Part shown: one piece after another, positions 52,800 through 54,150 of the stretch
Layout of the letters: the number at the start of each line of letters is the position of its first letter
How positions within the stretch are numbered: the first letter of the stretch is position 1
Source: Hyphochytrium catenoides
Lineage: Eukaryota; Protista; Hyphochytriomycota
DNA length: 64,000 nt
Assembly: GCA_900088475.1 (NCBI GenBank)
Contig: FLMG01000988.1
Location: forward strand, 124,001 to 188,000
Reading direction: 5' to 3'
Notes under the pieces: model-generated
Databases searched by the model: none
What the model saw: the letters and a program-made list of their open reading frames with translations, nothing else
Told to the model about the DNA's origin: nothing
Made by a program: the position numbers and the translations under genes

Positions 52800-54150
52800 A
52801 TGTGCCCCTGAAGAAGAGAGCCTTGAGCGCTTGCCCACAGAGATCTGAGCCTTCGTCTTCCCGTTGACGGTTCAAATTGGAGTCTGGCACCTGCAATTTG
52901 AAGCTTGGTGGTGCATTCAAACAGCGATCACCCTCGGCGCTAACATTATCAAGGGCAAAGAATCCACGAAGATTGAAAAAGTGTTTGCCAGAGGCTGCAT
53001 TTTGAAGTGGAGCCACAGCTTGTAAAGGGGGAAAGCTAATCGGGGTGAGGAACCCCCGCCTGCTAGAGGTAGAGAGAACGACGCCTCACCCGCTTGGGGA
53101 GTAGTAGTAAATATACGTAAGAGCTTTATAGCGGTAAGAGAGCACAATAATAGGCATCAAGTTAGCGAGTAACGCCGAGGTTCGGGAGGCGTTGGAGCCG
53201 GCACCAAACACGTTAGAATAGCCGTAGACCTGGTCATAGTAATAAGCCCCAGGGAAAGCAGTAATAATATATGTAAAGAAGCCCTTTATGGCATAACACT
53301 ATTGAAAAATAAAGTAGACTGCCATCCCGGACATGGCAATACGGGGAAGGTCCGCGTACGTTAAGCGAGAGGGCTAACGGGCAGCCGAGACTCACCTCCG
53401 TGAAAGCGCTACTGAAGGGTGCATTTTGTAATCACTTTCCTCTTCTTTCACACCAGCTTTAACTCTTAGGCATAGAAGAGGCTTTGCGGACTACACGGTC
53501 AAGTCCAGAGAATTCTTAGGGGCTACGATTTAGAGGAGGGCAATATCTTACTACTTCTCGATAGCTATAGGTATCCACGAAGTAACAAATAATACGCCTC
53601 AGGGAGTATATTAGCCGTATCAGACGTTAACGGCCCTTACCAGCCAGTCGTTAGCAGACCGCTAGAGACTCTGGATACTACTACTGTACAAGTTACAGCC
53701 TCCTCGAACAACAACAACGCACACGAGAACCTCCCTTTCTCTTTCTGGCTCTCTCTTCCGGCTCTTTCAAGGATGATGGCGGTGGATCATGATGATCATG
53801 GCACTACTATTATCAAGGCGACGGCTGTCGTCCCTGGGCGCAATCCTTTGGCTGGGCCACGGAGACAGTTCATCCGGCGATAAAGGAATGGGCTACTTAG
53901 GGCTATTTCTGACAGGGGTGCCAGTGTGGGACTTCCTCTGTCTTCTGTCACTGCCACGGGTTATGGAAGACAGATCTCGTTCGGTTTCTTCTTCTGCGAT
54001 GTTGTTGCCTTGGGGAGATGATGGTCTCTCCTTGACTGCCCCAGCCACCTGCTCATATGGTGGCTGCGGTTCGGGTTCAGCTTCCAGGAGCTGTTGCCGC
54101 AGGGCTTCTGTCGTACTACTTGCGCTTCAGGAGCTTTATTAGAACTGTCA
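52800..54150 (-). pseudogene. Decayed coding relic with a RIP-like TpA signature
   Basis: A minus-strand frame (..EALRQQLLEAEPEPQPPYEQ..RNSPK*PIPLSPDEL..) is interrupted by an in-frame TAG. The adjacent sequence is strongly TG-depleted and TA-rich. Confidence 0.45.

What the first reader, a model, noticed from the sequence alone, without database searches (positions are those of the whole stretch)
53040..53700. RIP-like, strand-polarised CpA-to-TpA hypermutation in an apparently non-fungal genome
Seen: a hand count of 53521-53700 (180 nt) gives 25 TA, 2 TG, 10 CA and 9 CG. There is no TG at all from ~53487 to ~53671, and none from ~53097 to ~53192. The neighbouring intact MYB gene has the opposite profile (52141-52200: 6 TG, 0 TA). 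An adjacent relic frame carries an in-frame TAG where CAG would restore it. CpG is retained, so this is not ordinary 5mCpG decay. Known: one-strand CpA-to-TpA mutation of repeats is the hallmark of ascomycete repeat-induced point mutation, and I know of no description of it in stramenopiles. Inference: this lineage may have its own repeat-defence mutator (RIP-like process, CpA methylation with deamination, or a deaminase).
Basis: partly seen in the sequence, partly recalled or inferred. Interest (0 to 1): 0.85.

Follow-up and report, generated by a model that had tools for sequence, protein, structure and literature searches.

The report
Sharp-edged TpA-rich, TpG-poor DNA tract
A 675-base single-copy stretch upstream of a MYB gene in a stramenopile genome has far too many TA steps and far too few TG steps for chance or for ordinary non-coding DNA. 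This fits a local burst of C-to-T mutation, but a fungal-style repeat defence could not be tested here.

Summary
An unfitted CpA/TpG-to-TpA scoring scan picks out 53022-53696 at 36.1 bits. The next best segment in the window scores 13.7, and 150 simulated 64-kb sequences never exceed 19.7.

The tract is not ordinary non-coding DNA. All 27 other ORF-poor segments have TA o/e 0.57-0.94 and TG o/e 0.83-1.5. The tract has 1.43 and 0.45.

The TA gain (+37) equals the TG loss (-27) plus the CA loss (-10). All neighbour contexts of TG are hit alike, CpG is spared, and GC stays at 48%. The anomaly disappears in a purine/pyrimidine alphabet. All of this fits transitions at CpA, mostly on the minus strand.

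The strand bias is modest (P about 0.03). The tract is single-copy in the window. No frame has a homologue, and there are no transposon hallmarks. The genome itself is not in any searchable collection.

A mutational footprint is therefore the favoured reading (about 0.5). Its agent is unknown, and "repeat-induced" is untested. This scan's first-stage readers flagged the same signature on at least a dozen other pieces of this genome. None of those notes showed a follow-up, so this is a lead that needs a whole-genome test.

The parts
53022..53696 (.). TpA-rich, TpG-poor tract. It holds TA 69, TG 17, CA 36, CG about 36, at GC 48%, and its plus strand is purine-rich.
   Evidence: Best segment of the unfitted CpA/TpG-to-TpA scan, 36.1 bits, against a simulated maximum of 19.7. 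The 50-nt bins show TA rising from 2 to 10 at about 53100 and falling from 7 to 0 at 53700.
53485..53672 (+). Longest TG-free run outside low-complexity DNA (187 nt). On the minus strand it is CA-free.
53095..53193 (+). Second TG-free run (98 nt). On its own it is within the window's background.
   Evidence: 15 runs in the window are at least 98 nt long.
53061..53360 (.). Sub-segment with three-base periodicity. It may be the remnant of a coding sequence; the plus frame starting at 53095 and the in-register minus frame cannot be told apart.
   Evidence: Base-by-phase chi-square is 18.7-23.3, P 0.005 against a Markov null. TA phases are 3/17/13. This plus frame has 7 stops in 202 codons, against 18 and 16 in the other two. 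No homologue was found.
53100..53109 (+). AGTAGTAGTA, the left arm of a 10-nt perfect inverted pair with 53676-53685. The arms sit near both edges of the TA-rich core.
   Evidence: I1: 17 nt, 82%. The pair is at chance level by my estimate and by the shuffles, and there is no target-site duplication. It is listed for completeness only.
53676..53685 (+). TACTACTACT, the right arm of the same inverted pair.
51117..52724 (-). Neighbouring intact MYB3R-like gene (535 aa, six Myb repeats). The tract lies about 300-970 nt upstream of its start codon.
54458..55237 (-). 259-aa ORF with a hydrophobic start and tail. It bounds the 1.7-kb spacer on the other side.
   Evidence: no Pfam hit. Its codon score is positive.

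Best explanation
The tract is a discrete, single-copy, now non-coding segment of about 675 bp. Its sequence has been reshaped by many C-to-T transitions at CpA steps. About 27 fell on the minus strand (read as TpG-to-TpA on the plus strand) and about 10 on the plus strand. That is roughly 40% of the CpA/TpG sites an average stretch of this window would carry. CpG and the other contexts were left alone.

The ancestor would have had about 53% GC, which is typical of coding DNA here. The first 300 nt still show codon-like periodicity. The segment is therefore most likely a decayed fragment of a gene or mobile element that was hypermutated as a unit.

Shown: the composition, its statistical strength, its sharp edges, its context profile, and its outlier status.

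Inferred: that mutation, and not native composition, produced it.

Not resolved: the agent. The candidates are a duplication-triggered RIP-like process, a deaminase acting on single-stranded DNA or cDNA before or after integration, or non-CG methylation followed by deamination.
For: The segment score is 36.1 bits, against 13.7 for the next best and at most 19.7 in simulations.

TA rises by 37 while TG falls by 27 and CA by 10. The total of pyrimidine-purine steps is 160, against 152 expected.

All four NTG and all four TGN trinucleotides are depleted to a similar degree. The other C contexts (AG, GG and CG on the plus strand) are not depleted.

CpG o/e is 0.95-0.97 against 0.67 in the window.

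Among 28 ORF-poor segments, the tract is the sole outlier in TA o/e (1.43 against 0.57-0.94) and TG o/e (0.45 against 0.83-1.5).

The tract is unremarkable in the R/Y alphabet (rank 151-375 of 828) but extreme in the S/W alphabet (rank 15-22), as expected if only transitions occurred.

It is the only non-repeat place in the window that passes the fungal RIP index thresholds.

Periodicity in 53061-53360 has P 0.005.

Phase by phase in the plus frame, the TA gain roughly tracks the TG and CA loss relative to known genes.
Against: There is no unmutated copy or homologue to align, so not one substitution is actually observed.

The flanking context of the TA steps does not discriminate between native and TG-derived TA.

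TC is also depleted (0.54), and the plus strand is purine-rich. The model does not explain either.

The strand polarity is only P about 0.03.

GC is barely lowered, unlike heavily RIPed fungal DNA.

A relative's locus (L002) has TA-rich intergenic patches (TA o/e 1.3-1.44). Some TA richness upstream of this gene family may therefore be native.

The open-frame evidence is within chance.
Confidence: 0.5

Rival explanations
1. It is true RIP-like genome defence. The tract was once duplicated, or belongs to a repeat family elsewhere in the genome. A duplication-sensing, cytosine-methyltransferase-like or deaminase machinery then mutated CpA to TpA along the repeat unit. This is a sub-case of the best explanation and is scored separately.
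For: CpA specificity without any neighbour preference, sparing of CpG, sharp unit-like edges and partial one-strand polarity all match Neurospora-type RIP. First-stage notes report the same signature on at least a dozen other pieces of this genome. These notes are unchecked leads, not evidence. Diatoms carry DNMT4 enzymes that group with fungal RID and have no known function (PMC9998398).
Against: There is no second copy in 64 kb, even with G/A- or C/T-collapsed matching. There are no transposon domains, terminal repeats or target duplications. The intact hAT transposase-like ORF in the same window has no unusual composition in these scans. The full-text searches found no report of RIP in stramenopiles. 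No RID-like gene could be looked for.
Confidence: 0.2
2. It is native sequence of unusual make-up with a function in the MYB upstream region, such as a promoter, a long leader or an unannotated non-coding transcript. Selection or local structure, not mutation, would favour TA and disfavour TG.
For: The tract lies about 300-970 nt upstream of the MYB start codon. The plus strand has no ATG from about 53335 to 53774, read directly from the sequence. TAACG/CGTTA, the core of Myb-type binding sites, occurs 7 times against 0.8 expected. The MYB orthologue's upstream region in L002 is also TA-rich.
Against: No other ORF-poor segment in the window resembles it. The L002 patches lack the TG/CA loss. 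There is no Rfam match and no excess folding energy on either strand. TG is depleted in every context, not only in ATG. The motif counts are small and are inflated by the TA and CG richness itself.
Confidence: 0.22
3. It is a fragment of foreign or mobile DNA (viral, horizontally acquired, or a retro-copy) that arrived with its own composition. It may already have been G-to-A edited on its sense strand by a deaminase during reverse transcription.
For: The tract has sharp edges, a CpG level unlike the host's, and residual codon periodicity in a plus frame whose sense strand would carry the G-to-A changes. Stramenopiles encode several uncharacterised deaminase families (PMC3239186).
Against: No protein or DNA homologue was found in Pfam, 1.84 billion representative proteins, phage records or metagenome contigs. 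The context depends on the base 3' of the C, not the 5' neighbour that marks APOBEC-type enzymes. There is no clear poly(A) tail or target duplication. A natural genome composition cannot be strand-asymmetric for TG against CA.
Confidence: 0.1
4. It is a chance fluctuation of dinucleotide content.
For: Short TA-rich patches of 120-380 nt are common in the window, and the second-best segment (13.7 bits) is at the chance level.
Against: 36.1 bits compares with a maximum of 19.7 in 150 simulated 64-kb sequences. By the usual extreme-value scaling, about 0.001 such segments are expected even in 100 Mb (my arithmetic).
Confidence: 0.01

Closest known systems
Repeat-induced point mutation (RIP) of Neurospora crassa and other ascomycetes
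   Same: Both show C-to-T at CpA and so TpA excess with CpA/TpG loss. CpG is less affected, the affected units have sharp edges, and changes are often biased to one strand. The tract passes the TpA/ApT, (CpA+TpG)/(ApC+GpT) and composite index thresholds used for fungi.
   Different: No duplicated partner is known. GC is hardly lowered (48%). Only about 40% of sites are converted. The host is a stramenopile, and RIP is described as fungal-specific (PMC2621366). No RID or Dim-2 homologue has been examined.
APOBEC/AID-type hypermutation of retroviral and retroelement cDNA
   Same: It is strand-polarised G-to-A on what may be the sense strand of a decayed coding fragment, and it is confined to one unit.
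   Different: APOBEC enzymes are defined by the base 5' of the C (TC, CC, WRC; my knowledge). Here all four 5' neighbours are equal and the 3' A is what matters. No retroelement features are present.
Deamination decay of methylated cytosines (CpG in animals, CHG/CHH in plant transposons)
   Same: Both produce C-to-T transitions concentrated in silenced or non-functional DNA.
   Different: CpG is spared here. It is actually higher than the window average. CTG/CAG shows no preference over the other NTG contexts.
Diatom DNMT4, the RID-related methyltransferase family of unknown function (PMC9998398)
   Same: It is a stramenopile enzyme family that groups with the RIP enzyme, which makes it a plausible agent.
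   Different: No DNMT4 gene was seen or could be searched for in this genome. This organism's class within the stramenopiles is unresolved. No mutational activity of DNMT4 has been reported.

Membership tests
RIP (ascomycete repeat-induced point mutation) | Dinucleotide footprint: TpA/ApT high, (CpA+TpG)/(ApC+GpT) low, composite index positive | tested here: met
   The values are 1.78, 0.70 and +1.08 for 53021-53680. The tract gives the only windows passing 1.15 / 0.75 / 0. These thresholds were set for fungi, and the window's baseline TpA/ApT is already 0.92.
RIP (ascomycete repeat-induced point mutation) | The target is a duplicated sequence; a second copy or repeat family exists | tested here: inconclusive
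   There is no copy in the 64-kb window by blastn, tblastx, or G>A- and C>T-collapsed blastn.
RIP (ascomycete repeat-induced point mutation) | Alignment of copies shows an excess of C-to-T at CpA over other changes | not testable with these tools
   There is no copy to align.
RIP (ascomycete repeat-induced point mutation) | Marked loss of GC in the affected DNA | tested here: not met
   GC is 48% against 49.5% for the window. The inferred loss is only about 5 points.
RIP (ascomycete repeat-induced point mutation) | RID/DNMT4-type or Dim-2-type cytosine methyltransferase homologue in the genome | not testable with these tools
   Only this window is readable. The scan's notes hold no such gene.
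RIP (ascomycete repeat-induced point mutation) | The host is a fungus with a premeiotic dikaryotic stage | tested here: not met
   The named relatives of the neighbouring MYB protein are stramenopiles (Ectocarpus, Hondaea, oomycetes, diatoms), with none from fungi.
APOBEC-type cDNA editing | Preference set by the base 5' of the edited C | tested here: not met
   TGA, TGC, TGG and TGT are all depleted alike: 4, 4, 6 and 4 observed against 11.8, 11.9, 11.3 and 9.9 expected.
APOBEC-type cDNA editing | The substrate is a retroelement or retro-copy | tested here: inconclusive
   No reverse transcriptase, LTR, poly(A) tail or target duplication was found. There is only weak codon periodicity.
Methyl-cytosine deamination decay (CpG or CHG) | Depletion of CpG, or of CAG/CTG specifically | tested here: not met
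   CpG o/e is 0.95-0.97 against 0.67 in the window. CTG is depleted no more than ATG, GTG or TTG.

The most novel reading that the evidence does not exclude
This stramenopile has a genome-wide, unit-targeted CpA-to-TpA mutator that inactivates duplicated or foreign DNA. It would be a functional analogue of fungal RIP that arose outside fungi, or that uses a RID-related DNMT4 or a stramenopile-specific deaminase. This tract would be one of its footprints.
Probability: 0.2. Interest if true: 0.85.

Novelty: new variant of a known kind. Interest (0 to 1): 0.5.

Why it matters
RIP is regarded as a fungal speciality. A comparable context-specific, unit-bounded C-to-T mutator in a stramenopile would show that mutational genome defence arose more than once or is older than thought. 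It would also give a testable function to the RID-related DNMT4 enzymes or the orphan deaminase families of this group, and it would change how pseudogenes and transposon relics in such genomes are read. This single locus does not establish that. It provides a clean, statistically strong example and a simple scoring scheme that can be run over the whole assembly.

Tried and rejected
- **Paralogue search in the window.** Plain blastn, tblastx and transition-collapsed blastn gave only low-complexity matches.
- **Internal repeats and terminal inverted repeats.** Transition-tolerant Smith-Waterman scores lie inside the shuffle range. The 10-nt inverted pair at the edges is at chance level and has no target duplication. 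TRF found nothing in the tract.
- **Coding relic by homology.**
  - Pfam on ten stop-to-stop pieces gave no credible hit; the only match was Salyut at E 0.025, below its cut-off.
  - HMMER of the 63-aa plus piece against 1.84 billion representatives gave 0 hits.
  - Word-indexed searches of the 48-aa plus piece and the 70-aa minus piece gave 0 candidates.
- **Structured RNA.** Rfam found nothing at E up to 1. No tRNA was found. Folding z-scores were -0.18 and -0.41.
- **Foreign DNA.** There was no match among phage records. Two metagenome scans, one with Y/R written at each TA, gave 0 hits.
- **Locating the genome.** Three window proteins are not on record, and the best MYB hit is 72% identical over 29% of the query.
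- **Synteny.** The upstream regions of MYB relatives (L001-L003) share no sequence with the tract.
- **Flanking-base context test.** A test of whether the TA steps look TG-derived had no power.
- **Degenerate telomere repeat.** This was considered and rejected because the tract has too many C (150 of 680) and only two TTAGG.
- **Solo LTR after a polypurine run at 53016-53030.** This was considered and rejected because there are no matching termini or target duplication (direct reading).
- **Species identity.** The MMETSP sample number of a relative led nowhere.

Full report
**Observation**

- 53521-53700 holds 25 TA, 2 TG, 10 CA and 9 CG.
- The plus strand has no TG from 53485 to 53672 (187 nt) or from 53095 to 53193 (98 nt).
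- 52141-52200, inside the MYB gene, has 6 TG and no TA.
- CpG o/e is 0.95-0.97 in the tract against 0.67 for the window.

The three longer TG-free runs in the window all lie in trinucleotide or GA low-complexity DNA. With 4221 TGs and a mean gap of 15.2 nt, about 0.02 runs of 187 nt are expected per 64 kb (my arithmetic). The 98-nt run is ordinary.

**Strength of the signal**

In 660-nt windows, 53021-53680 has the most TA (66, against mean 31 and sd 6.9) and the largest TA-minus-TG of all 564 windows.

I also ran a segment scan whose weights were not fitted to the tract: TA doubled, TG and CA halved. It returns 53022-53696 at 36.1 bits. The next segments score 13.7, 10.3 and lower. In 150 first-order Markov simulations of 64 kb, the maximum score has mean 11.2 and never exceeds 19.7.

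The edges are sharp. TA per 50 nt goes from 2 to 10 at about 53100 and from 7 to 0 at 53700.

**Not ordinary non-coding DNA**

I masked every open frame of 90 codons or more. This left 28 ORF-poor segments of at least 250 nt, 17.8 kb in all. Their TA o/e is 0.57-0.94 and their TG o/e is 0.83-1.5. The tract is the one exception, at 1.43 and 0.45. Pooled, ORF-poor DNA has TA 0.78, TG 1.08, CA 1.07 and CG 0.67, which is almost the same as ORF-covered DNA.

Short TA-rich patches are frequent, but they are AT-rich and short.

**Shape of the anomaly**

- Measured against window frequencies, TA is +37 (69 against 31.9), TG is -27 (18 against 44.9) and CA is -10 (37 against 46.7). The pyrimidine-purine steps sum to 160, against 152 expected.
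- ATG, GTG, CTG and TTG are all reduced to 30-45% of expectation, and so are TGA, TGC, TGG and TGT. Neither neighbour of the CpA on the minus strand matters.
- The dinucleotides that would report C-to-T in CpT, CpC or CpG context on that strand (plus-strand AG, GG, CG) are not depleted.
- GC is 48%.
- Collapsed to purine/pyrimidine, the tract is unremarkable (rank 151-375 of 828 windows for k = 2 to 5). Collapsed to strong/weak, it stays extreme (rank 15-22). This is what transitions alone would do.
- It is the only non-repeat place in the window that passes the index thresholds used to call RIP in fungi.

Some features do not fit. TC is also low (0.54) and the plus strand is purine-rich (A 206, G 176, C 150, T 148). 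The model leaves both unexplained. The flanking bases of the TA steps cannot tell native TA from TG-derived TA. The strand bias, TG 17 against CA 36, has one-sided P 0.006, or 0.029 after allowing for base composition. It rests mainly on the second half, where the counts are 3 against 13.

**Setting**

The tract sits in a 1.7-kb spacer between two minus-strand genes:
- A 535-aa MYB3R-like gene (51117-52724, six Myb repeats).
- A 259-aa ORF (54458-55237).

The tract therefore lies about 300-970 nt upstream of the MYB start codon.

The MYB protein's named relatives are stramenopiles (Ectocarpus, Hondaea, Phytophthora, Plasmopara, Pythium, Aphanomyces, Aureococcus and several diatoms), with none from fungi. 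The best hit is only 72% identical over 29% of the query. Three window proteins are not on record in the contig collection. This genome and its close relatives are therefore out of reach of the tools.

**What the tract is made of**

- There is no second copy in the window by blastn, tblastx, or blastn after collapsing G to A or C to T.
- There is no significant internal direct or inverted repeat.
- A 10-nt perfect inverted pair, AGTAGTAGTA at 53100 and TACTACTACT at 53676, sits near both edges of the TA-rich core. It is at chance level and has no target duplication.
- There is no Rfam family, no tRNA and no excess folding energy.
- The longest open frames are within chance.
- 53061-53360 does show three-base periodicity (chi-square 18.7-23.3, P 0.005 against a Markov null).
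  - TA avoids codon positions 1-2 of one plus frame (phases 3/17/13).
  - That frame has 7 stops in 202 codons, against 18 and 16 in the other two.
  - Phase by phase, the TA excess over known genes roughly equals the TG and CA deficit.
  - The in-register minus frame cannot be excluded and has the better codon score.
- No frame has a homologue:
  - Pfam found none.
  - 1.84 billion representative proteins gave no hit for the 63-aa plus piece.
  - The word-indexed search found none for the 48-aa plus piece or the 70-aa minus piece.
- Phage records and two metagenome DNA scans gave nothing.

A decayed coding fragment in the first half is plausible.

**Relatives**

I fetched loci around MYB relatives. 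L002 and L003 come from an organism with a similar GC and dinucleotide profile, and its MYB is 49% identical. Their intergenic regions, including the one upstream of MYB, have TA o/e 1.3-1.44, but TG and CA are only about 15% below average. They share no sequence with the tract.

Some TA richness in spacers of this lineage may therefore be native. The TG loss is specific to the tract.

**Interpretation**

Chance is excluded. 'Ordinary spacer' is contradicted.

A native element with a function upstream of MYB remains possible. TAACG/CGTTA occurs 7 times against 0.8 expected, and the plus strand has no ATG for about 440 nt. It does not explain the context-free TG loss or the purine/pyrimidine invariance.

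Foreign DNA with its own composition cannot be strand-asymmetric unless it was itself edited.

I therefore favour a mutational footprint, with confidence about 0.5: roughly 37 C-to-T changes at CpA, three quarters of them on the minus strand, within a unit of about 675 bp that was about 53% GC beforehand.

The agent is open. A RIP-like, duplication-triggered process fits the context and the unit-like edges, but it lacks its defining feature, a second copy (about 0.2). APOBEC-type editing fits the polarity but not the context rule. CpG or CHG methylation decay is contradicted by the spared CpG and by the equal loss in all NTG contexts.

**Literature**

Full-text searches found no report of RIP or RIP-like mutation in stramenopiles. 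RIP is described as fungal-specific (PMC2621366). A 2025 survey of 1,239 fungal genomes used oomycetes and other stramenopiles only as outgroups (PMC12543289).

Diatom DNMT4 enzymes group with fungal RID and have no known function (PMC9998398). Stramenopiles also carry several uncharacterised deaminase families (PMC3239186).

**Earlier notes of this scan**

First-stage readers flagged the same signature on at least a dozen other pieces of this genome. None of the notes shown carried a follow-up. They come from the same kind of reader, so I treat them as a reason to run the genome-wide test and not as support.

**Verdict**

The mutational reading is favoured but unproven. The claim of a repeat-targeted defence is untested. 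The whole-assembly scan and the transition-blind copy search described under next steps would settle it.

Noticed in passing
window 38752-40953 (+): An intact 733-aa ORF carries a BED zinc finger and a hAT dimerisation domain, so it is a hAT transposase-like gene. None of the composition scans flags it. If it belongs to a multi-copy family, it would be a natural control for any repeat-targeted mutator.
   Followed up: partly
window 42966-43192: This is the second-best TA-rich, TG-poor patch (TA 20, TG 4, CA 9; 13.7 bits). It has the same TAG/TTAG-rich look as the tract but is at the chance level for 64 kb.
   Followed up: partly
window 49648-49987: Three tandem units of about 110 nt are 81-93% alike. 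They are too short for a substitution spectrum.
   Followed up: no
window 55870-56600: A long CAG/GCA/GTA trinucleotide low-complexity region is open in several frames. It accounts for the window's longest TG-free runs and for very high TpA/ApT values that are unrelated to the finding.
   Followed up: no
window 61929-61972 and 62404-62488: Two assembly gaps (runs of N) are flanked by CT and GA microsatellites that form an inverted pair.
   Followed up: no
window 51117-52724 (-): The MYB gene holds six Myb repeats, that is two R1R2R3 sets. The internal duplication (51300-51635 against 51861-52190) is 69% identical at DNA level. Relatives with the same layout exist in metagenome contigs (L001, L002).
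   Followed up: partly
L002:4440-4940: In a related organism, a plus-strand reading that looks like the tail of a transposon protein is followed directly by a TA-rich patch with very few TG (4800-4940). All three intergenic regions of that 13-kb locus have TA o/e 1.3-1.44.
   Followed up: partly
window 53601-53960: A second stretch with three-base periodicity (chi-square 16-19) spans the right edge of the tract and the start of the 117-aa plus ORF 53789-54142. Codon scores do not support that ORF.
   Followed up: no
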